Shown here: one piece after another, positions 10,870-44,984 of the stretch
Layout of the letters: each line of letters opens with the position of its first letter
Numbering within the stretch: position 1 is the stretch's first letter
Virus record (IMG/VR): IMGVR_UViG_3300050120_000230
Location: 124,001 to 188,000 of that record
Direction: 5' to 3' (one strand)
DNA length: 64,000 nt
The notes under the pieces: generated by a model
What the model was told of the DNA's origin: nothing
What the model saw: the letters and a program-made list of their open reading frames with translations, nothing else
Databases searched by the model: none
Made by a program: the position numbers and the translations under genes

Positions 10870-12465
<1,596 letters not shown>

Positions 12466-28416: not shown

Positions 28417-28727
28417 GTTTCGATGAAGCCCGCCGTTTCCGCGACCAGCCAAGCCCGTCCTTGGAATTTTCCGCCTTGGATGTTTACAAGCGACGTACCG
28501 AGATCACCGACAGCATCGACGTGTGGTTCACCGATACGGGCCAATGGCGCTATCTTGCCATGCAAAACGGGAAAATCAGTGACGAAGTGCGCGAGTGGTG
28601 TGAAGCCAATTTCAAATCAGCATTCACCTTCAGCAAAATGACTGTCGCGGCTATCACAGCCGAGAACCTGCATCTTCACGTCACCTCAGATACAGACGCG
28701 CTCAATTTCATCATGCGGTGGTTCTAG
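28413..28727 (+). CDS. Hypothetical protein, FxxxxDAxxFKLxW family
   Basis: VREWCEANF...SDTDALNFIMRWF. Confidence 0.7.
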   Translation: MSFDEARRFRDQPSPSLEFSALDVYKRRTEITDSIDVWFTDTGQWRYLAMQNGKISDEVREWCEANFKSAFTFSKMTVAAITAENLHLHVTSDTDALNFIMRWF

Positions 28728-29485
28728 ACGATGGCGTGAACGAGGCGTTTGACCTCGTCAGTGGCGTGCAGAGGAACGTGATTATAGATCATCTCCGGCG
28801 GACCATCGTCCTCGACGCGAACGATCCCCACGATCCGGGTAGACCCGTCGAAACCGACGACGTTCGGAATGCGAACGGAGTGCCGTGATTTCAGTTCCGG
28901 GTGTTCCATTCGAGAGAAAATTCGGACGAGCTTTTCTTTGGTATCTCCCCAAGTGAACTCGGCTTCTCCATCGACACCGAGTTTCATTTCAAGCCACGCC
29001 TCTGCGGCTTCGTGGATCAAACCTTCGGGAAGGTCACCGTGTTGATCTCCTGCGAGTTCGGAGAAACCAACCGCCAACCGCTCGACATAGTTTTCGAAAC
29101 TTTCGTCGCCCGGATACATGTCTTCGATCTCGGGACTACGAAGCTGATAGCCATCGGCTTGCAGCATGGACTTCAACACATGGTCGAAGATGATGTCGAT
29201 GGTGTCCTCGTCCGGCAAGGCTTTCTTCATATCGACTTCGATGACGATCAGCAAATAGTCAGCGATCTCGTGCGCGTTGAGATAGTCTCGCAACTGGATG
29301 GCATACCGAGACGCGTAGACGCCCTCTAGGCTGGCCCAACGCATGTCATCGTAGTTGCCGCCATTATGGTTCGGCACGAGCCCGTGGGCTTGAATAGAAA
29401 CCAGATTCGTCAGACGCGTGACATGCAGGTAGAATGACCGAACGTCCGTCAACTGCCTCTCGACCAAATTAATCCATTCGCGCAT
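28724..29485 (-). CDS. Late protein with possible ART-like fold
   Basis: MREWINLVE N-terminus, YLHVT...SI..HGL.P...GVY motif, late promoter at 29491. Confidence 0.7.
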   Translation of the reverse strand: MREWINLVERQLTDVRSFYLHVTRLTNLVSIQAHGLVPNHNGGNYDDMRWASLEGVYASRYAIQLRDYLNAHEIADYLLIVIEVDMKKALPDEDTIDIIFDHVLKSMLQADGYQLRSPEIEDMYPGDESFENYVERLAVGFSELAGDQHGDLPEGLIHEAAEAWLEMKLGVDGEAEFTWGDTKEKLVRIFSRMEHPELKSRHSVRIPNVVGFDGSTRIVGIVRVEDDGPPEMIYNHVPLHATDEVKRLVHAIV

Positions 29486-29531
29486 TCCCATATTTATCGA
29501 CGGCACATTTGGTTTGCGATAATTTGAAAAT

Positions 29532-30110
29532 GTGCACCATCCTTTCACTCTCGCGTCGGTCAAGAAGGGCTCCCTCAAACTTGAGGGCACCGGGCGCGTG
29601 TTTCCTATGCAGCTTCTTCCGGTCTTTGCGTCGGCAGAAGAAGCTCATCAGTGCATGGGGTTCCATTTTTCCATGTGGCTCGAAGCCAACCCCGACGTGA
29701 CGGACTATCGCTTGGCGTTGGATATGGAAGTTTGCGACTCGCCAATTACCGTGCATCGTCAAGCGCCGGTGTGGATTTTCTTCGGGAAACTGAAAGACAA
29801 AAATGCGTTCCAAAGATGGATTGCACGTTACAGGGAGTGGTTCGGCGGAAACGATATCGACCGCGCCTATTTTCCAGTATTGCCGATCAGCGGCCGTCAC
29901 ACACTGACTTTTCTGACTATTCCTTCTGGGATGAAACTCGATCCTAGAATGATGGACATGACTTTCCCTGATGGCAGCGTCGAACGTTGGGCGTGGGTAT
30001 TGAGTAATTGTCGCAACCCAGTCTATGTGACCCCTAACGGGCTTGCATTCACGTCTGCGAAAGAAGCTCTCCATTTCAAACTGCGATGGTCCGAGGCCCA
30101 AAATGTCTGA
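29532..30110 (+). CDS. Hypothetical protein, FxxxxDAxxFKLxW family
   Basis: C-terminus FTSAKEALHFKLRWS. Confidence 0.7.
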   Translation: MHHPFTLASVKKGSLKLEGTGRVFPMQLLPVFASAEEAHQCMGFHFSMWLEANPDVTDYRLALDMEVCDSPITVHRQAPVWIFFGKLKDKNAFQRWIARYREWFGGNDIDRAYFPVLPISGRHTLTFLTIPSGMKLDPRMMDMTFPDGSVERWAWVLSNCRNPVYVTPNGLAFTSAKEALHFKLRWSEAQNV

Positions 30111-32210: not shown

Positions 32211-32558
32211 ATGGAAAACATGGGCAAGACGACGATTGATCTGGCTGACGACAAGCAGATGGTCATCTCGAAAGATTTCGATGAAGATTTGGGACACCCG
32301 GTCTACACGGCCACGGTGCAAGGGGAGCCTAGCCCGGTCGCAAAAATTGTCGAAAGTGATATCGATAACTGGCTGAGCAATCAAACGCTCGCCAAGTCGT
32401 TGCAAGCACACGGCCTTACGAACCAAGCGGTCAACAATGCTCTAGAAGGTCTGGCTAATTTCCACGCCAGCTTCAAGACCGACGAAAACACCACGTTCGA
32501 TGTGAGCGTTGATCCCGTCCACGAATCGGTGGGCGTCGGAGTGACGATCAAGTTCTAA
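32211..32558 (+). CDS. Hypothetical late protein
   Basis: CTAAATA at 32199. Confidence 0.65.
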   Translation: MENMGKTTIDLADDKQMVISKDFDEDLGHPVYTATVQGEPSPVAKIVESDIDNWLSNQTLAKSLQAHGLTNQAVNNALEGLANFHASFKTDENTTFDVSVDPVHESVGVGVTIKF

Positions 32559-32815
32559 GGAACAAGTTTCTCGACCGTCCAGATGCCGAGTTCTTCGCCA
32601 TATGGATCGACACCGATTTCGCCACGACACAGCGATGTCCACGCCGTCCCAACCCATCCATTTTCGTATTCGGGCATCCCGGCGCCGCAGAGGCTCAACT
32701 GATAGCCGAGATGTTTTTCCAGAGCGTGGTCGAACGCTGCGGGATCATGCGTCGCATCGTCATCTTCGAACGTGAATTTCTGCTCGCCGTTCAAAAACAC
32801 AACATACGTCGTCAT
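32555..32815 (-). CDS. Hypothetical protein
   Basis: Coding-like 3' part of track ORF 32555-33061; start uncertain. Confidence 0.55.
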   Translation of the reverse strand: MTTYVVFLNGEQKFTFEDDDATHDPAAFDHALEKHLGYQLSLCGAGMPEYENGWVGTAWTSLCRGEIGVDPYGEELGIWTVEKLVP

Positions 32816-32944
32816 CGCAAACCCCATCTCGTGCAACGAATACATATCATCAACTGGTTTGGGTGGAAAGGCCGCGAGTGCACTCCGCACCGTTTCGGCA
32901 AATCCCGCTACGCATAGCGGGCAGACTAGCGGCCGGTCCCAGCC

Positions 32945-33611
32945 TTTCCCCCAAACCAATTGAGTGGTGAGTGTCGGACGACACAGTCCTGTCGGTCTGC
33001 ATCCAGATTCCCGAGTCGGGCATTGCTCCCGAATTCTCCGCGAGGGGGTTATGATACCCAAGCGGTGGTGCTGTTACCCTCGGCGACAACTCAGCGGCCA
33101 TCCCTCCACCCGTCATCCCTCGACCCGAAAGTTGCCGGGATGGCGAATTCGTGGCACCCACTTCGTTGCACAATCAACCCCGGTATGGACTGCCGGGATG
33201 TGCACTAAAGGAGGGGGCAAGGCGCCGCAAGCTGGTCCCCTCTTTTTCTACCGAACTTCAGATGTCCAATCCTACGTGCTCGGCGACAGTTCGAATATTC
33301 CGCTACTGGGGGTCCTTTTTCAGGAGGCAGTCTACCCCCTTACTAAAAGACCCTTTTCGCGAGGACATCCGCTCTCCCCGATCTGCGCTGCGGAGACTAA
33401 CCCGCCCGCTCTGACCGAAGTGCGCTACGCCCAAAACCCTTCGTGTGGTTACAAGAACCCCCGGCTCAATACGCTTAGGCTCAGCCCGCATTGGGCCTGC
33501 CCCAGCAACCTTCCGGCGTTGAAACCGGCGTTTACGCGTCTTCGCTTACCGCACCCCACCACGAGGTGTTTCGGCTAGAGATGGTGGCCCGGAGGCTCAT
33601 GTAACCACACG
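32945..33611 (-). ncRNA. Candidate large structured ncRNA A (GOLLD/ROOL-class-like)
   Basis: No credible ORF; 23-bp stem between 33589-33611 and 33442-33464; many hairpins; lies next to tRNA-like units. Confidence 0.6.
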
Positions 33612-33618
33612 CATACTG

Positions 33619-33718
33619 TGCGGGGACTAGGGCTCGAACCTAGTGTCTTCCCTACCTCACCGAGTGTGGCCACACCCTCGTATAGTAGGACTGCTCTAAC
33701 CCGCTGAGCTACCCAACA
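33619..33718 (-). ncRNA. Degenerate tRNA-like unit with a hairpin insert in the anticodon loop
   Basis: D-arm AGCTCAGCGGGTTAGAGC and T-arm CTAGGTTCGAGCCCTAG; poor acceptor stem. Confidence 0.55.
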
Positions 33719-33776
33719 AAACCTTTTCGGACTTACCGGTTCATCACCGCGCCGAGCGTGCCCCGAAGGGCGGAAT

Positions 33777-33881
33777 TGGCACCACGAGGAAGACTTGCAC
33801 TTCCATACCCTTGTCAACAGCAAGGCTCATCATATTCCCGCAGATCGTGGCCACGATCTCCGGCTTTTAGATCACCGTGGT
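33777..33881 (-). ncRNA. tRNA-Asn(GTT)-like unit with ~30-nt insert
   Basis: Acceptor ACCACGG/TCGTGGT-G-CCA, T-arm GGAAG-TGCAAGT-CTTCC, arm CCTTG-CTGTTGA-CAAGG. Confidence 0.55.
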
Positions 33882-33940
33882 ATCTCGTGCCCTCTCGGGC
33901 ATGTTCATGTTGGTAGCCGTTCCCCGCTAAGGGACAGTCT

Positions 33941-33997
33941 TATTCGTGGTGGGGATCGAACCCACGACCCAAGGCTCTACCGCTGAGCTACACGACC
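33941..33997 (-). ncRNA. Mini tRNA-like unit lacking the anticodon arm
   Basis: GGTCGTG-TAGCTCAGCGGTAGAGC-CTTGGGTC-GTGGGTTCGATCCCCAC-CACGAAT. Confidence 0.6.
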
Positions 33998-34014
33998 TAC
34001 ACTACCACACTTTC

Positions 34015-34688
34015 ACTCAGTTCGCGTGCACGCTCCCCGAGCTAAACCTAGATTGCGTGAACCTCTCAACGATAGAGCGGAAGGATCAGGCCGCTTCATT
34101 GCTTCCACGGCCCATACGATCCAATCACCACGCAACCAAACCTTCGTGCCCATTCGGGCGAAATCTCCAACCACGCCCTCGCTCTAAGCGAACGACAACG
34201 GATCGGCGAGGTGTCATCGCTGTCTAGCCCACGATGGTCCCCTTCGGATCGCTCACGCTATATTTCAAGACGCAGCGCCGCAACTTTTTGCCCATTCAGG
34301 CGAATTGGTGGAGGGACTTCCCTCTCCAACGAAGCGGCTCGCGCGGGGCCATCTCCAAAGTCGGAGTGTGAAGTTGGGCCTACCCCCTAAGCAATGGCAT
34401 TTCGGCCACTCAGGTTTATCCCACTTTTCCAGCCTAGTCTCGGGTCTAGAAATCCCTACCTTCAGCTTCTCTCGACACTGAGGGCCAGACACTTCCTCCT
34501 GAACCCTCGCGAGGGTTAGAGAATCTGCGCTGACACTTTTAGCTCGGAATGCTCACGCAATCCCGCCTCAGTAATTCGTGTTGCCTTCCCGAGATCAGAA
34601 CGCTGGTAAACCGCCGGGCCAAACCCTTTGGCTCTTCCAAGGACTTCTGGTTAGCTAATGCCGAACCAGCGCCCCGTTCTCAAGAACA
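34015..34688 (-). ncRNA. Candidate large structured ncRNA B (ROOL/GOLLD-class-like)
   Basis: Own promoter at 34694-34721; 12-bp long-range stem between 34551-34562 and 34051-34062; dense hairpins. Confidence 0.6.
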
Positions 34689-34791
34689 ACCTCAATCTAC
34701 ACCGCCCCCGAGAACGGTCAAGCAATTTCTTTTGGTTGACCAAAAATCTTTTCGTGGGAGTATTCAATCTATAGTCAGCCGGGAGAACCAT

Positions 34792-35262
34792 GTGCAATAC
34801 GAGACCCACATCTTCAGCAAGAATGAGCCGTGGGCCACCGAATGGCACATCCTCTACTTGACAGCCGCCGACGCGGAGAAGGTGTTTCTCAGCACAAATG
34901 AATCCGTGAAAGGCTACCGTCGCAACGGTGGCGAATGGGCGCGCGCCAGTCATGATAGCTATCGCTATCTCAGGCGTGAAGTTGATGAATGGGTCCGTGC
35001 CAATGCCGGACCCCAAGAAGGTGAAGTGTGGGAATGCGACCGCTACTACCACGCGGACGAGCCTCTCCCAGCATTGCCGCAACGCGCCGGTCGCCGAGCA
35101 TGGCTGGATGCCTTCAAATGCTGGCCAGAAGTCTACGGAAACTACCATCATCACCAGTGGGCGGCCGGATCGCACCTCGACACCGAAAAGAAAGGGATCA
35201 GAGCTTTCATTCGGTTCAGAAGCGAGACGACCGCTGTGCTGTTCAGGACGCTGTTCCTGTAA
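34792..35262 (+). CDS. Hypothetical protein, FxxxxDAxxFKLxW family
   Basis: GTG start after GGGAGA; VDEWVRANAG...FRSETTAVLFRTLF. Confidence 0.7.
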   Translation: MQYETHIFSKNEPWATEWHILYLTAADAEKVFLSTNESVKGYRRNGGEWARASHDSYRYLRREVDEWVRANAGPQEGEVWECDRYYHADEPLPALPQRAGRRAWLDAFKCWPEVYGNYHHHQWAAGSHLDTEKKGIRAFIRFRSETTAVLFRTLFL

Positions 35263-35688: not shown

Positions 35689-35692
35689 ATTG

Positions 35693-35782
35693 AGAATCAG
35701 GTGGGACTCGAACCCACGGGGACAAGCTTCGCTTGTTACGGGGGTAAAAACCCCGCCCTCTCGCCGCTGAGGTGACTGATCC
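35693..35782 (-). tRNA. Atypical tRNA-Lys(TTT) with long variable arm
   Basis: Loop TT-TTT-AC, V-arm ACAAGC-GAA-GCTTGT, U73, no CCA. Confidence 0.7.
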
Positions 35783-35822: not shown

Positions 35823-36416
35823 ATGTTTTGTGAATTTTGTTCTGACTTGATTTCTTCTCGATATGGTTCTGGTCGTTTTTGTTCTTCCAAAAGTGCCAGA
35901 GGTTTCAGCACCAAAGCTAGGCGCGCAGAGATCAATTCCAAGGTCAGCAAGAAATTATCGAATAGACCGTCTGGTCGAACGCTCGATTGCGTGACCATTT
36001 CTTTTCTGGCTGACAAACGACGTGAAAAACTCATGGAACTGCCATGGGAATCAATTGGCCTATACGCCAAAAAATCTCGCGTTCTGGGTGAACAAAATCA
36101 CCGGTGCAATGGATGCAACCTTGATGAATGGCGGGGCCAGCCGTTGGTTTTGGAAATCGAACATAAAGATGGCAATAACCAAAACAACGCCCGAGAAAAT
36201 CTCGAAGGCTTGTGTCCGAATTGCCATAGCCAAACGCCAACATGGCGTGGTCGTAACAAGGGTCGATCTAAATCAATCTCAGATCAAGAATTCATCGAAC
36301 ATCTGCAAGCTGCTAGCAGCATTCATCGCGCGCTGTTGAGCTTAGGTCTCTCAGCGAAGGGAACGAATTATAACCGTGCGAGAACTCTCATCCAATCACA
36401 TGGCATTTCTATGTGA
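35823..36416 (+). CDS. HNH homing endonuclease
   Basis: CNGC...LEIEHKDGNNQNN..ENL..LCPNCHSQT. Confidence 0.92.
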   Translation: MFCEFCSDLISSRYGSGRFCSSKSARGFSTKARRAEINSKVSKKLSNRPSGRTLDCVTISFLADKRREKLMELPWESIGLYAKKSRVLGEQNHRCNGCNLDEWRGQPLVLEIEHKDGNNQNNARENLEGLCPNCHSQTPTWRGRNKGRSKSISDQEFIEHLQAASSIHRALLSLGLSAKGTNYNRARTLIQSHGISM

Positions 36417-36634: not shown

Positions 36635-36678
36635 AGCAACAATTTATCTCTCTGAGATGTTGCGATGCAATATATTTG

Positions 36679-36762
36679 AGGGCGCGGTGGGACTCGAACC
36701 CACGGTGTGCTTACGCAAAAAGATTAAGAGTCTTCCCCCTTCGCCGCTCGGGACACGCGCCC
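36679..36762 (-). tRNA. Atypical tRNA-Lys(CTT) with long variable arm
   Basis: Loop CT-CTT-AA, V-arm TGC-GTAA-GCA, U73, no CCA. Confidence 0.75.
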
Positions 36763-36841: not shown

Positions 36842-36845
36842 ATTG

Positions 36846-36933
36846 TAGTCCTGCTTGGATTCGAACCAAGATCACGCCCCGATCTGGGACTACGGATTAT
36901 AAATCCGACGCTCTGCCGTTGAGCTACAGGACC
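36846..36933 (-). tRNA. tRNA-Ile(TAT) with long variable arm
   Basis: Loop TT-TAT-AA, V-arm GTCCC-AGATC-GGGGC. Confidence 0.8.
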
Positions 36934-40199: not shown

Positions 40200-41291
40200 A
40201 TGCCTCTTGTTAACAACGTCCGCACTACACCCGGCTCGGACGTAAAATTCTTCGCGAACACGACGCCCGATGCAAACTCGGTTGCTAAGGTCGATGCTGT
40301 CCCGACTGTTGCTGGACCTCCGGGTCCGCAAGGTGTTGGCATTCGTTCTATTACGATTTCCGACAGCGATGACCTTCTTTTCACTCTAACTGACAACACC
40401 ACTATTGACGCAGGTACTCTGCCGCCCGGTCCCACTGGTCCAACTGGACCTACTGGTGTCACTGGGCCGCCGGGTCCGATTGGTAATATCGGCCCACAGG
40501 GTATCAAGGGCGACAAAGGCGACACGGGTGCAACCGGCACGGCTGGTATTCCGGGTGTTCAAGGTCCGAAGGGCGACAAAGGCGACACTGGTCTGACGGG
40601 TTCCGTTGGCCCGGAAGGCGATCACGTCACCAACGCGGTCATCAACGGCTCGAATCACATCATCTTCACGCTGAGCGACAACAGCACTATCGACGCTGGT
40701 CTGTTGCCTCCCGGCCCGACCGGCAACGCAGGCCCCACGGGTCCGCAGGGTCCTCAAGGCGTGGACGTGGCGAACGCGACGATCAACGGTTCGAACCATC
40801 TCATCTTCACGCTGTCGAACTCGGCTGTTATCGATGCCGGTCCTTTGCCGCCCGGCCCCACGGGTGGCATTGGTCCGACTGGACCGGCTGGTCCCGCTGG
40901 TCCGCAAGGTAACGCTTCGACGGTGGCTGGCCCGGCCGGACCCGCAGGCCCGAACTTCGAAACGGTCGTCAATCTCAACACCGCCACCGGAACGGTCACG
41001 CTCGATCTTGGCTCGAACAGTTTCTACAATCTGACCCTCACCGGCAACGTCACCATCGCGTTCTCCAACACGGCGCTGACGACTCGTTCCTATACGGCCG
41101 TCGTTTCCATCAAACAGAATTCCAGCGGTGCGGGAACGTTCACGGTGACGTGGCCGGGAACCTGCAACACGCCGGGCAACGTCGTCTATTCGCAATCGAC
41201 GGGTCTGGGCGCCACTGACCTCTACACCGTGTTCACGATCAACGGCGGGGCGAGCTACTTCCTCAGCCAAATTGGGCAACTGTATTCCTAA
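40200..41291 (+). CDS. Collagen-like fibre protein
   Basis: GPxG triplets, repeated A.INGSNH.IFTLS..IDAG.LP module, late promoter at 40167. Confidence 0.88.
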   Translation: MPLVNNVRTTPGSDVKFFANTTPDANSVAKVDAVPTVAGPPGPQGVGIRSITISDSDDLLFTLTDNTTIDAGTLPPGPTGPTGPTGVTGPPGPIGNIGPQGIKGDKGDTGATGTAGIPGVQGPKGDKGDTGLTGSVGPEGDHVTNAVINGSNHIIFTLSDNSTIDAGLLPPGPTGNAGPTGPQGPQGVDVANATINGSNHLIFTLSNSAVIDAGPLPPGPTGGIGPTGPAGPAGPQGNASTVAGPAGPAGPNFETVVNLNTATGTVTLDLGSNSFYNLTLTGNVTIAFSNTALTTRSYTAVVSIKQNSSGAGTFTVTWPGTCNTPGNVVYSQSTGLGATDLYTVFTINGGASYFLSQIGQLYS

Positions 41292-42538
41292 TGCTCTACC
41301 GCTATCTTCGCCCTCTGCCGGTCCTCGCTACGCCCATTGGTTCGGTGCCTCTACCGTTGACGATGGATCGCGGAGCTTTGAGCACTATTTGGAAAGACGT
41401 TCCTACGCCAATCGCTATGCGTTCGGCTGATGGCACGAAAGTCGTGTTTGGCTCGACAGTGTCGGGAGCCCCGCCGAAGAGCTACATCCAAGGCTACGAT
41501 TTCACGAACGCTATGGGGACTGTCTTCTCTACGGCCGGGAACGGCGTGGGTATCCTGATGGACACGCCCGGTGTCACCAACTCAACTGGTTTCCAACCGA
41601 CCATTCGAAACATCGGCATTAGCCCGGACGCGCATTACGCGATTGGTATCGCTTCGACGAACGGCAAGATCGGCACCGGCAGCATCGCGGAATACACTTC
41701 GATTCAGTATTTCAAGCTGACCAGTGGTCAATACACGCTTGTCTTCCAGCGTCCGTCTACCAAGAACAAGGACCGGAACCAACTTCTCAATTTCTACGAT
41801 GCGACGAGCTACACGCAGAACTTGGAGTTCACGGACGGCACAACAAACGAGGCCCTGCAAAACCTCCTGTTGAGCGACACTGCCTCGCCGACTGTGGTCA
41901 ATCAGTTCACGACGGCCCTATTCATCAAGGTGCTCACCTCATTCACGGTCGGGGGCGATGTCGTTGTCGTCTACACGACCTTGCAGTCCGGCCCGCAGAA
42001 CACGGCCATCCTATACGATGTCTACCGGCCTGCCGCAGGCTCCGTCTTCACGGCTATCGTGCAAGGTGTTCAGTTCCCCGGCTACGACAACACCGTTTGC
42101 GCGGCATTGCCGCAGTTCGAAGCCATGCCCGGCAACAAGGTCGCCATGTCGTTGACTTGCACGACCATCTCTTTGAACCCGAGCCTGTTCCTCTATCAGT
42201 ATGATGGAGCCGGTGGTTTCACGGCTCTGCCCATCGACGTGCCGCTATCTGGTCCGGCACAAGGATCGACGTTCAACAATTACAACCAGAATACGGTCCA
42301 GATGTCTTATGGCGTCGGCGCCAGCAAAAACATTCTGGCGATCAACAATGCGAGTGGCCAATTCCTCTATCGCTACACGGGAACTGGTCTTCAAAAGGTC
42401 CCGCACGCTCAATTTTTGCCGAATCCGGCAGTCGTGACATATATTTGTGCAGACTACCTCGGCAGGCTTTTTGTCTATTGTAACAACCAGTTCGGCGGCA
42501 GCACCGCGACCGGACAACTCTTCGATCTCGGGGTCTAA
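41291..42538 (+). CDS. Putative receptor-binding/virion protein
   Basis: 415 aa, beta-rich, TAATG-coupled to the collagen gene. Confidence 0.75.
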   Translation: MLYRYLRPLPVLATPIGSVPLPLTMDRGALSTIWKDVPTPIAMRSADGTKVVFGSTVSGAPPKSYIQGYDFTNAMGTVFSTAGNGVGILMDTPGVTNSTGFQPTIRNIGISPDAHYAIGIASTNGKIGTGSIAEYTSIQYFKLTSGQYTLVFQRPSTKNKDRNQLLNFYDATSYTQNLEFTDGTTNEALQNLLLSDTASPTVVNQFTTALFIKVLTSFTVGGDVVVVYTTLQSGPQNTAILYDVYRPAAGSVFTAIVQGVQFPGYDNTVCAALPQFEAMPGNKVAMSLTCTTISLNPSLFLYQYDGAGGFTALPIDVPLSGPAQGSTFNNYNQNTVQMSYGVGASKNILAINNASGQFLYRYTGTGLQKVPHAQFLPNPAVVTYICADYLGRLFVYCNNQFGGSTATGQLFDLGV

Positions 42539-43290: not shown

Positions 43291-43375
43291 TGGGGAATGG
43301 TGTAATGGTAACATCCCTGACTTTGAATCAGGAGACGAGGAGTTTATGTAGGTTCGAGCCCTACTTCCCCAGCCA
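43291..43375 (+). tRNA. tRNA-Gln(TTG) with enlarged variable region
   Basis: Loop CT-TTG-AA, 15-nt variable region, CCA end. Confidence 0.85.
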
Positions 43376-43573: not shown

Positions 43574-43648
43574 AACTTGGCACGGTGATGAACCGGTAAG
43601 TCCACAGAGTTATTGACTTGGTGCTACGAAAATCCGTAGCTGCAAGGT

Positions 43649-43981: not shown

Positions 43982-44146
43982 GCGAAATATCGTACAACAC
44001 GAAAAGCGATAAATCGTGCAAGGAATCATCGGGATCAGCGTCGGCAGTTCCTCCCCTCGGGGTGTGAAAACGGACCCCCGGTGACTTAGGCTAGAGGGTT
44101 GTAGGTGACCTGTATTTGACTGGGAACCTTCGTCCATGTGTTTTGT

Positions 44147-44887: not shown

Positions 44888-44984
44888 CCGCACGGTGATG
44901 AGCCGATAAGTCGGCAGATTTTGCCCACCAAAAAAGGCCCCGGCGAACCGGGGCCTTGATGGCACTGCACCGAAGTGCGGATGC

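What the first reader, a model, noticed from the sequence alone, without database searches (positions are those of the whole stretch)
33619..33997. Three differently broken tRNA-like units between the two large RNAs
Seen: (a) 33941-33997 has acceptor, D and T arms but no anticodon arm; (b) 33777-33881 has an Asn(GTT) arm, G73 and CCA plus a ~30-nt insert; (c) 33619-33718 has a hairpin in its anticodon loop. Both inserts carry the same self-complementary core GTGGCCAC (GGCC loop). Inference: RNase P/3'-processing punctuation that releases the large RNAs, tRNA decoys for anticodon nucleases, or kissing-loop dimerisers.
Basis: partly seen in the sequence, partly recalled or inferred. Interest (0 to 1): 0.6.

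Follow-up and report, generated by a model that had tools for sequence, protein, structure and literature searches.

The report
Conserved tRNA-shaped modules in phage RNA locus
Three tRNA-shaped pieces that cannot decode sit in a 1.9-kb non-coding RNA region of a huge peat phage; two are kept by selection in related phages, and one belongs to a widespread, phage-enriched class of tRNA look-alikes without an anticodon arm that I could not find described.

Summary
All three units lie on the minus strand of a ~1.9-kb non-coding locus in a 415-kb huge-phage record.

- **Unit (a), 33997-33941:** it scores as tRNA (37.3 bits) with the anticodon arm replaced by 3 nt. Homologues in five other places keep acceptor, D and T stems with compensatory changes. 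They carry only a variable mini-hairpin, or nothing, where the anticodon arm should be. A pattern scan found at least 42 similar armless tRNA-likes on other viral contigs, against 16 in 185,579 prokaryote genomes.
- **Unit (c), 33717-33619:** it is conserved in two relatives. The anticodon stem and the inserted hairpin covary, and the GUGUGGCCACAC tip is invariant.
- **Unit (b), 33881-33777:** it is a window-specific ~130-nt insertion. It has an Asn-type loop, G73-CCA, and an extended D-arm capped by an 18-nt GGCC palindrome.

The flanking large RNAs are structured and covarying, and match no Rfam family.

So these are selected tRNA-derived scaffolds, not randomly decaying pseudogenes. The most likely role is as handles for tRNA end-processing enzymes and as stabilising scaffolds that present a self-complementary hairpin. 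That mechanism is inferred; no RNA data exist. New variant of a known kind; interest 0.62.

The parts
34694..34721 (-). Sigma-70-type promoter-like site (TTGACC, 16 nt, TAGATT) at the head of the non-coding locus
   Evidence: Scan hit. The same two hexamers and spacing are kept in L091 and L093 while the spacer sequence differs.
34000..34690 (-). Upstream large structured RNA ('RNA1'), with a conserved core at 34278-34476
   Evidence: No coding signal. The core is 84% identical to L093 and L091. The consensus fold has 51 pairs, 3 of them compensatory. No Rfam family matches.
33941..33997 (-). Unit (a): 57-nt tRNA-like with acceptor, D and T arms and no anticodon arm
   Evidence: Rfam tRNA 37.3 bits. 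Across six homologous units 94.7% of cells are paired and 7 pairs have changes on both sides; 0 of 500 shuffles reach this. It is a member of a phage-wide armless class.
33886..33935 (-). Two small hairpins after (a); the second (tetraloop GAGA) marks the left edge of the (b) insertion
   Evidence: Sequence. Hairpins in this position exist in L093 and L091 with different sequences.
33759..33887 (-). Window-specific insertion carrying unit (b) and a second copy of the GCCC-NNNN-GGGC hairpin (UUCG loop)
   Evidence: No match in L093 or L091, while both flanks match (sequences). A contig from soil run X2 that matches 33891-34022 with 2 mismatches (about 98% identity) stops matching at 33891.
33777..33881 (-). 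Unit (b): tRNA-Asn-like cloverleaf. Anticodon GUU at 33818-33816, G73 at 33780, CCA at 33779-33777, and an extended D-arm
   Evidence: ARAGORN at 95% threshold. MFE cloverleaf z -2.1. Rfam tRNA does not match.
33842..33859 (.). Perfect 18-nt palindrome AGATCGTGGCCACGATCT at the tip of the extended arm of (b)
   Evidence: It is the longest GGCC-centred palindrome in the 415-kb record.
33725..33752 (-). Conserved hairpin motif with 7-nt loop UGAUGAA, followed by GUAAGUCC, just upstream of (c)
   Evidence: There are three copies in the genome (33749-, 43583+, 44893+). It is kept in L091 and L093 and occurs in G003. G001 has the flipped form with the stem flipped CGG/CCG to CCG/CGG.
33619..33717 (-). 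Unit (c): tRNA-shaped scaffold with D and T arms. The anticodon arm is lengthened by an internal loop and a hairpin
   Evidence: In the three-genome alignment 100% of cells are paired and 4 pairs change on both sides. The homologues fold as cloverleaves with z -3.0 and -3.3.
33664..33675 (.). Invariant 12-nt palindrome GTGTGGCCACAC at the tip of the (c) hairpin
   Evidence: Identical in the window, L091 and L093. The base pair below it is G.U or A-U in the window, C-G in L093 and U-A in L091.
33442..33611 (-). Domain closed by a 23-bp long-range helix; first part of the downstream large RNA ('RNA2', which runs to about 32860)
   Evidence: Inverted repeat. The consensus fold has 46 pairs, 9 compensatory. 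In L091 this domain lies before (c) instead of after it.

Best explanation
The three units are tRNA-derived structural modules of one ~1.9-kb non-coding RNA locus. The locus is transcribed on the minus strand from a conserved host-type promoter, beside the phage's tRNA array. They keep the parts of a tRNA that end-processing and elbow-binding enzymes recognise (acceptor stem, T arm, D arm). They have lost or rebuilt the part that decodes.

Proposed working, all of it inferred:
1. Host RNase P cuts at the 5' side of each module that has a full acceptor/T-arm stack, above all (a).
2. RNase E/Z and exonucleases trim the 3' side.
3. The long transcript is thereby cut into separate stable pieces, with defined ends for the large RNAs.
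4. In (b) and (c) the tRNA body also acts as a stabilising scaffold. It presents a hairpin with the self-complementary tip (U)GGCC(A), which pairs with another copy or binds a dimeric protein.

Shown: the structures, their conservation and covariation, the insertion status of (b), and the wide distribution of the (a) type in phages. Inferred: transcription, cleavage, and what the hairpin binds.
For: Structure and selection:
- (a) matches tRNA except for the anticodon arm.
- Six homologous units in five places keep acceptor, D and T helices. 94.7% of cells are paired, 7 pairs change on both sides, and 0 of 500 shuffles are as good.
- The arm position holds five different mini-hairpins or nothing.
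- (c) is 100% paired in three genomes, with compensatory changes in the anticodon stem and in the hairpin.

This is not the fringe of a tRNA array:
- In G001 the syntenic locus (TerL +21.7 kb) holds several mini-arm units and no normal tRNA within 15 kb.
- In G002 an (a)-type unit sits in its own small gene, with a TTGACA/TAGTTT promoter, a ~130-nt leader and an intrinsic terminator.

Wider class: at least 42 armless units (33 distinct) lie on other viral contigs. Most have 6-7 of 7 acceptor pairs and point the same way as nearby tRNAs.

Locus features: the promoter hexamers are conserved, and the flanking RNAs are structured.

Precedent from established knowledge:
- MALAT1-mascRNA.
- Plant mitochondrial t-elements (PMC1920247).
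- MHV68 tRNA-miRNA units.
- RNase P processing of the P1/P7 C4 RNA.
- The engineered tRNA scaffold for RNA expression (PMC3753655).
Against: - No RNA evidence exists. No RNA run holds the locus and only contigs could be laid.
- (c) has only 3-6 acceptor pairs and (a) has a conserved G2xA71 mismatch, so RNase P cleavage is not assured.
- Many armless units elsewhere stand alone, with no neighbouring RNA to release. This points to a function of the unit itself.
- The D-arm is invariant. Simple punctuation would not need that.
- A 4-nt GGCC loop is small for a kissing contact unless the closing U-A pair opens.
Confidence: 0.45

Rival explanations
1. The units are built-in architectural parts of one very large ornate RNA, in the way GOLLD and ROOL are large phage RNAs near tRNA islands. 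They are not cut out. The tRNA elbows act as tertiary docking points, and the GGCC tips are self-interacting loops that join copies into a multimer.
For: - About 1.9 kb is without coding signal.
- Both flanks covary.
- Modules are shuffled between genomes but retained.
- The palindromic tips are conserved.
- GOLLD and ROOL are phage RNAs 'often near tRNA islands', and GOLLD half-shells are joined by self-interacting kissing loops (10.1101/2024.12.08.627333).
Against: - No Rfam GOLLD or ROOL match even at E<=10.
- Module order differs between close relatives, and (b) can be present or absent. That is hard to reconcile with one tightly packed fold.
- (a)-type units also occur alone elsewhere.
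Confidence: 0.2
2. The units are decoys or sponges for proteins that bind tRNA. (a) would serve for factors that act on the acceptor end or the elbow, for example abortive-infection toxins of the MenT/AbiEii or HEPN type that modify or clip tRNA 3' ends. (b) would serve for enzymes that read a GUU (Asn) anticodon loop.
For: - The armless type is strongly enriched in viral contigs over cellular genomes. It often stands alone.
- Acceptor, D and T arms are all under selection.
- (b) and an independent unit in G001 both carry a canonical U33-GUU-A/G37 loop.
- From established knowledge, phage tRNAs are known to counter tRNA-targeting defences.
Against: - No CCA is encoded in (a) or (c), and no CCA-adding enzyme was found in the record.
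- No defence or counter-defence gene is linked.
- There is no direct evidence of any binding partner.
Confidence: 0.2
3. The units are decaying tRNA pseudogenes at the edge of the tRNA array and have no function.
For: - They lie 1.3 kb from a 14-gene tRNA array.
- (b) is missing in close relatives and has a non-canonical T-loop.
- The window's (a) has lost even the mini-hairpin.
Against: - Compensatory substitutions occur in (a) and (c).
- None is a recent copy of a tRNA in the genome.
- G001 has such units without any tRNA array nearby.
- All stems of (b) are perfect, as is its 18-nt palindrome.
Confidence: 0.07
4. (c), and perhaps (b), are working tRNA genes interrupted by short introns that are spliced out to give decoding tRNAs.
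For: - ARAGORN in intron mode predicts the same 23-24-nt 'intron' at position 34/35 in all three genomes.
- Other tRNAs of this genome carry 35-88-nt inserts in the anticodon loop.
Against: - After removal the loop would read CUUGAGG (anticodon UGA, Ser), on a body without the long variable arm that bacterial Ser tRNAs have.
- The acceptor is degenerate in two of three genomes.
- The two loop sides face each other, not staggered as in a bulge-helix-bulge motif (sequence).
- No RtcB ligase is present in the record.
- The insert is far too short for a group I intron, and no intron family matches.
Confidence: 0.04

Closest known systems
mascRNA at the 3' end of MALAT1, and plant mitochondrial t-elements (tRNA-like processing signals)
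   Same: These are small tRNA-like folds with an intact acceptor/T-arm and a reduced or non-conserved anticodon arm. They lie next to a long non-coding or messenger RNA. RNase P and RNase Z cut at them and so define the neighbour's ends (PMC1920247 for t-elements; mascRNA from established knowledge).
   Different: Those are eukaryotic or organellar. Here the setting is a phage, several different modules lie in one locus, the D-arm is invariant, and cleavage has not been shown.
GOLLD and ROOL large ornate phage RNAs
   Same: They are long structured non-coding RNAs of phages and prophages, often beside tRNA islands. Self-interacting kissing loops build RNA-only multimers.
   Different: The Rfam models for these families give no match. 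The locus here is modular and rearranged between relatives. tRNA-shaped units are part of it.
YrlA bacterial and phage Y RNAs (tRNA-mimicking module bound to Ro/Rsr)
   Same: They have a tRNA-like module with T arm, D arm and acceptor-like stem that does not decode, and they are found in some phages.
   Different: In YrlA the chain enters through the anticodon-stem side and the acceptor is closed. Here the acceptor is open and the anticodon side is closed or absent. No YrlA match covers the units and there is no TROVE/Ro gene in the record.
Engineered tRNA scaffold for expressing RNAs in bacteria (Ponchon and Dardel; PMC3753655)
   Same: A foreign hairpin is grafted into the anticodon arm of a tRNA body, which gives processing and nuclease resistance. 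Unit (c) has exactly this layout.
   Different: That is a laboratory design. Here it is natural and conserved, and in (b) and in a G001 unit the same kind of hairpin sits on the D arm or the variable arm.
Stable RNAs of unknown function co-transcribed with the tRNA cluster of phage T4 (species 1 and 2)
   Same: They are small stable non-decoding RNAs made from a phage tRNA transcription unit and matured by tRNA-processing enzymes (established knowledge).
   Different: No sequence relation was tested or is expected. T4's RNAs are not armless cloverleaves.

Membership tests
tRNA (Rfam RF00005), as a decoding tRNA | Score at or above the gathering threshold (29 bits) | tested here: inconclusive
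   (a) 37.3 bits, met. (c) 19.4 bits, not met. (b) no match at E<=10, not met.
tRNA (Rfam RF00005), as a decoding tRNA | Anticodon arm with a 5-bp stem and a 7-nt loop | tested here: not met
   (a) has 3 nt in place of 18 model positions. (c) has a 24-nt hairpin in the loop. Only (b) has a canonical loop, CUGUUGA.
tRNA (Rfam RF00005), as a decoding tRNA | 7-bp acceptor stem and canonical D-loop/T-loop elbow | tested here: inconclusive
   (a) has 5 Watson-Crick pairs, G.U and a conserved G2xA71, with a canonical elbow. (b) has a perfect acceptor but T-loop UGCAAGU and no normal D arm. (c) has a canonical elbow and only 3-6 acceptor pairs.
tRNA-like processing signal (mascRNA / t-element type) | Acceptor/T-arm stack intact, anticodon arm reduced, placed next to a long RNA | tested here: met
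tRNA-like processing signal (mascRNA / t-element type) | Cleavage by RNase P at the 5' side and by a 3' endonuclease, giving defined RNA ends | not testable with these tools
   No RNA run holds the locus. Only contigs of two DNA runs could be laid.
GOLLD / ROOL | Match to the family covariance models | tested here: not met
   No hit at E<=10 in the window locus or at E<=1 in relatives.
GOLLD / ROOL | Large structured phage RNA near a tRNA island | tested here: met
   context statement.
YrlA / Y RNA | Match to RF02553 and a linked Ro (TROVE) gene | tested here: not met
   The only weak YrlA hits overlap ordinary tRNAs elsewhere. There is no TROVE domain in the 415-kb record, which is 72% complete.
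Protein-spliced tRNA intron (bulge-helix-bulge type) | Two 3-nt bulges on opposite strands separated by 4 bp at the exon-intron junctions, with a ligase available | tested here: not met
   The loop sides AUA and GUGA face each other. No RtcB was found.
Anticodon-arm-less tRNA-like units of phages (class delimited here) | D arm joined to the T arm by about 8-14 nt, a complementary 7-nt acceptor, no CCA, on viral contigs | tested here: met
   (a) has an 11-nt joint. 42 places and 33 distinct sequences share this layout. Only 16 occur in 596 Gb of cellular genomes, half of them without acceptor pairing.

The most novel reading that the evidence does not exclude
Phages widely encode a so far undescribed class of ~57-nt 'top-half' tRNAs (acceptor, D and T arms, no anticodon arm) that act on their own, for instance by occupying host tRNA-end enzymes or defence toxins. 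In one clade of 0.4-0.6-Mb phages these units, together with tRNA scaffolds carrying self-pairing GGCC hairpins, have been built into a new modular giant RNA that assembles into multimers.
Probability: 0.25. Interest if true: 0.85.

Novelty: new variant of a known kind. Interest (0 to 1): 0.62.

Why it matters
tRNA genes of phages are usually read only as a way to adjust codon supply. This locus points to a second use for the tRNA fold.

- Selection keeps the half of the molecule that enzymes grip and discards the half that decodes.
- The same design recurs on many unrelated viral contigs but hardly at all in cellular genomes.

If the units are processing handles, they give a simple rule for finding the ends of large phage non-coding RNAs. 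If they act by themselves, they are a new kind of small phage RNA aimed at the host's tRNA machinery or at tRNA-directed defences.

Either way the class is easy to test. The RNAs are short, and RNase P assays, pull-downs and native gels are routine.

Tried and rejected
- **DNA search of GenBank phages** with the locus (near and distant modes) gave no match.
- **Exact-pattern scans of IMG/VR** for the (a) junction, the (c) hairpin and a combined (a) pattern gave nothing outside the window's own record.
- **Metagenome scan with an RNA1-core pattern** returned the L093 contig and two false positives inside a protein gene.
- **BLAST of the locus against five TerL relatives** found only short tRNA-like words. 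The flanking proteins 28724-29590 and 41291-42538 are not conserved there.
- **Model R2 for (c)** found only ordinary tRNAs in G001-G005.
- **The small minus-strand ORF 32558-32827** has no relative.
- **The neighbour protein P0001/P0003** has no Pfam, PHROG or Atlas lead.
- **A hunch that RNA2 resembles RNase P RNA** was not borne out by Rfam at lax filters.
- **A long-range pairing of GCGGGGA (33927-33921) with the 3' strand of (c)** appears in the MFE. It is only partly kept in L093 and absent in L091, so it was not adopted.
- **Read laying** gave only contigs: no RNA, no ends.
- **Whole-region MFE** is not better than shuffles (z -0.8). The support comes from covariation, not from folding energy.

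Full report
**Setting**

The window is bases 124001-188000 of a 415,409-bp IMG/VR virus record, estimated 72% complete. GC content is about 55%.

- It encodes a T4-type large terminase at 10873-12465.
- It encodes RecA, and a PheRS alpha subunit that lies between two tRNA-Phe genes.
- The window holds 31 tRNA genes and the whole record 56.
- The only sequencing runs that hold the locus are a peat metagenome, probably the source, and a soil metagenome. Neither is RNA.

**The observation**

All three units are on the minus strand.

Unit (a), 33997-33941:
- It aligns to the Rfam tRNA model end to end at 37.3 bits.
- Eighteen model positions, the anticodon arm, are replaced by three bases.

Unit (b), 33881-33777:
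- It has a perfect 7-bp acceptor and a 5-bp anticodon stem with loop CUGUUGA.
- It has a T arm, G73 and CCA.
- ARAGORN calls it at 95% of its normal threshold. Random genomes of the same size and composition give only 3-5 such calls.
- The Rfam model does not see it. The T-loop is UGCAAGU, and the D arm is replaced by a long arm.
- The minimum-energy fold is a cloverleaf. Its D-side arm is 3 bp, an internal loop, and a 10-bp hairpin that ends in GGCC (z -2.1).
- In the alternative 75-nt reading the 5' acceptor strand is one half of the 18-nt palindrome, so the two structures would compete.

Unit (c), 33717-33619:
- It has canonical D and T arms.
- A 24-nt hairpin sits in what would be the anticodon loop.
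- Its acceptor is weak.

Shared core:
- GTGGCCAC occurs six times in the window against about one expected.
- Only five GGCC-centred palindromes of 12 nt or more exist in the whole record.
- Two of them are the tips of (c) and (b), 178 nt apart.

**Surroundings**

- A codon-usage scan shows no coding signal in any frame from about 32860 to 34750.
- The 237-codon ORF at 34549-35262 is real only in its last ~156 codons. Its homologues are 155-156 residues long.
- A sigma-70-like site (TTGACC, 16 nt, TAGATT) at 34721-34694 points into the locus on the minus strand.
- Downstream of (c) a 23-bp long-range helix closes a 170-nt domain.
- No Rfam family other than tRNA matches anywhere in the locus, even at E<=10 with lax filters.

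**Relatives**

Terminase relatives include five near-complete genomes of 0.42-0.61 Mb, G001-G005. BLAST found nothing there but short words.

The homologues of the 156-residue neighbour gave two syntenic loci:
- L091, on a 569,661-bp NCBI contig. L092 is the same sequence.
- L093, on a 22-kb JGI contig from the metagenome that also holds a 91%-identical terminase.

Both show the same layout:
- the divergent neighbour gene;
- the same promoter hexamers;
- a 1.7-1.9-kb gene-free stretch;
- then the same tRNA array.

**Unit (a) in relatives**

- L093 8970-8905 and L091 9121-9053 score as tRNA at 40.9 and 43.8 bits.
- They carry a tiny hairpin where the anticodon arm should be: GCCC-AGA-GGGC in L093 and UCCCU-GAAG-AGGGA in L091. 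The window's copy has none.
- The acceptor changes from GGUCGUG/CACGAAU to GGUCGCA/UGCGAAU, which is two compensatory pairs.
- A covariance model built from these three found further short units. One is in G001 at the syntenic distance from the terminase. There is a second in G001 and one in G002.
- Across the six units 94.7% of cells in the acceptor, D and T helices are paired. Seven pairs change on both sides, and no shuffle of 500 does as well.
- G1.U72 and the G2xA71 mismatch are kept in five of six.

Two context facts argue against a simple array-edge origin:
- In G002 the unit lies in its own small gene. It has a TTGACA/TAGTTT promoter, a ~130-nt leader, and an intrinsic terminator 11 nt after the unit.
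- In G001 the locus is over 3 kb of non-coding sequence with several such units and no ordinary tRNA within 15 kb.

**A wider class**

A pattern was scanned that fixes one common D-arm word and the start of the T-loop and allows 8-24 nt between them.

In IMG/VR:
- Forty-two places have a joint of 9-14 nt, which means no anticodon arm at all. The rest mostly carry mini-hairpins.
- The 33 distinct armless sequences have very different acceptor strands. These are nevertheless complementary, 6-7 of 7 pairs in most.
- They lack CCA. Where tRNAs lie nearby, they point the same way in all but one case.

In cellular genomes:
- The armless form of the pattern hit only 16 places in one genome each of 185,579 prokaryote species (596 Gb).
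- Half of those lack acceptor pairing.

So (a) belongs to a widespread, phage-enriched class. Five full-text searches found no description of it. That is not proof that none exists.

**Unit (c) in relatives**

- L093 8813-8716 and L091 8781-8684 are 84-89% identical to the window's (c).
- All 24 proposed pairs are standard pairs in all three genomes. Four pairs change on both sides.
- The relatives' copies fold on their own into full cloverleaves with a long anticodon arm (z -3.0 and -3.3).

The arm has these parts:
- a 5-7-bp stem that covaries;
- an invariant internal loop, AUA opposite GUGA;
- three pairs, of which one is C-G or U-A in the relatives and G.U or A-U in the window;
- a bulged G;
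- the invariant GUGUGGCCACAC.

If the hairpin were removed, the loop would read as anticodon UGA. The body has no long variable arm, and the acceptor is degenerate in two of three genomes.

The junctions do not form a bulge-helix-bulge, and no RtcB is present. A spliced decoding tRNA is therefore unlikely.

The model for (c) found no further copies in G001-G005.

**Unit (b) in relatives**

- Window 33759-33887 has no counterpart in L093 or L091, while both flanks align.
- The insertion is bounded by two copies of a GCCC-NNNN-GGGC hairpin. The relatives have one.
- A contig from soil run X2 matches 33891-34022 with two differences and stops matching at 33891.
- So (b) is a recent, lineage-specific module. 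It is not a copy of any tRNA in the genome.
- G001 has an independent analogue. It is a tRNA-like unit with a canonical UUGUUAA (Asn) loop and a 66-nt insert in the variable arm that ends in GUCUGGCCAGAC. G001 also has a GGUGGCCACC hairpin just upstream of its (a) unit.

The same kind of GGCC-tipped hairpin thus sits on the anticodon arm in (c), the D arm in (b) and the variable arm in G001.

**The large RNAs**

- The core of the upstream RNA (34278-34476) and the helix-closed domain downstream (33436-33616) are conserved. They give consensus folds of 51 and 46 pairs, with 3 and 9 compensatory pairs.
- Modules are rearranged. In L091 the closed domain precedes (c).
- A 65-nt module that lies in the plus-strand tRNA array of the window (about 44020-44090) lies inside the non-coding locus in L091 and L093.
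- A 148-nt segment of the upstream RNA is absent in one soil contig. It is bounded by two copies of an AAUUCGCC-loop-GGGCA hairpin. That hairpin recurs about eight times in G001.

**Interpretation**

Random decay is excluded for (a) and (c). What is selected is the acceptor/T-arm stack and the D/T elbow. These are the parts read by RNase P, 3' processing enzymes, T- and D-loop modifiers and other elbow binders.

I therefore favour processing handles and stabilising scaffolds inside a multi-module precursor, with the GGCC hairpin as the displayed element (confidence 0.45).

The hairpins can pair with themselves. Extended duplexes are favoured by 19-21 kcal/mol in a two-strand fold, which is trivial for palindromes and shows only that pairing is possible.

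Two rivals remain serious, at 0.2 each:
- The whole locus is one ornate, possibly multimeric RNA in the manner of GOLLD and ROOL.
- The units act alone as decoys or sponges for tRNA-binding proteins. The many stand-alone armless units elsewhere favour this one.

No Ro gene, RtcB or CCA-adding enzyme was found in the record. That weighs against Y-RNA, splicing and phage-made CCA-end models. The caveat is that the record is incomplete.

**Verdict**

- The units are a new variant of the known theme of tRNA-like elements.
- The most valuable by-product is the phage-wide armless class.
- Every step that involves RNA ends, cleavage or binding is inference and needs the experiments listed under next steps.

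Noticed in passing
whole record G000 (415,409 bp): Four 6-bp palindromes are completely absent: TGCGCA (49 expected), TCCGGA (104), AGGCCT (59) and GGGCCC (46). TGGCCA and CGGCCG are at expectation. This looks like avoidance of specific restriction sites.
   Followed up: no
G000:C1:269172-269335, 373113-373220, 373269-373381 (outside the window): Three otherwise good tRNAs carry inserts of 86-88, 35 and 37 nt in the anticodon loop. These are too short for group I introns. The 88-nt insert shares a conserved stretch (..CCUUUGAAGG..GAGAGCCUAAAGCU..) with a tRNA insert in relative G003 (L246).
   Followed up: partly
window 35692-35782, 36678-36762, 36845-36933, 43291-43375: Lys(UUU), Lys(CUU), Ile(UAU) and Gln(UUG) tRNAs are 85-91 nt long because of extended variable regions. 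That is unusual for these amino acids. The long Lys tRNAs recur in L091 and L093.
   Followed up: no
G000:C1:373269-373472: tRNAs with anticodons UUA and CUA, which would read the stop codons UAA and UAG, lie side by side. TAG is the rarest stop among long ORFs (8 of 68). No recoding was tested.
   Followed up: no
window 33729-33749 (-), 43583-43603 (+), 44893-44913 (+): A hairpin motif with loop UGAUGAA followed by GUAAGUC occurs three times, always in tRNA-array spacers. It is conserved in L091 and L093 and occurs in G003; G001 has the flipped form with a flipped stem. It could be a promoter, a processing site or a protein-binding site.
   Followed up: partly
window about 44020-44090 (+): A ~65-nt module (UCAUCGGG...GAAAACGGACCCCCGGUGA, with an 8-bp closing helix that covaries in L093) lies in the plus-strand tRNA array here. 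In L091 and L093 it lies inside the non-coding locus.
   Followed up: no
window 34140-34165 and 34285-34305 (-): The hairpin motif (C)CAAUUYGCC-loop-GGGCA is repeated. The 148 nt between the copies is skipped in one soil contig, and the motif recurs about eight times in G001's locus.
   Followed up: partly
window 35823-36416 (+): An HNH endonuclease gene sits inside the minus-strand tRNA array, between two tRNA-Lys genes.
   Followed up: no
L114 5740-5990 (G002:C1:284740-284990, minus strand): A self-contained small RNA gene in a 608-kb relative. It has a promoter, a ~130-nt leader with a CCAAUUC-hairpin, a 68-nt mini-arm tRNA-like unit and an intrinsic terminator.
   Followed up: partly
window 34549-35262 (+): This ORF is over-long. 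Homologues are 155-156 residues, so the gene probably starts near 34795. In L091 and L093 it is preceded by a 62-63-residue gene that the window lacks.
   Followed up: partly
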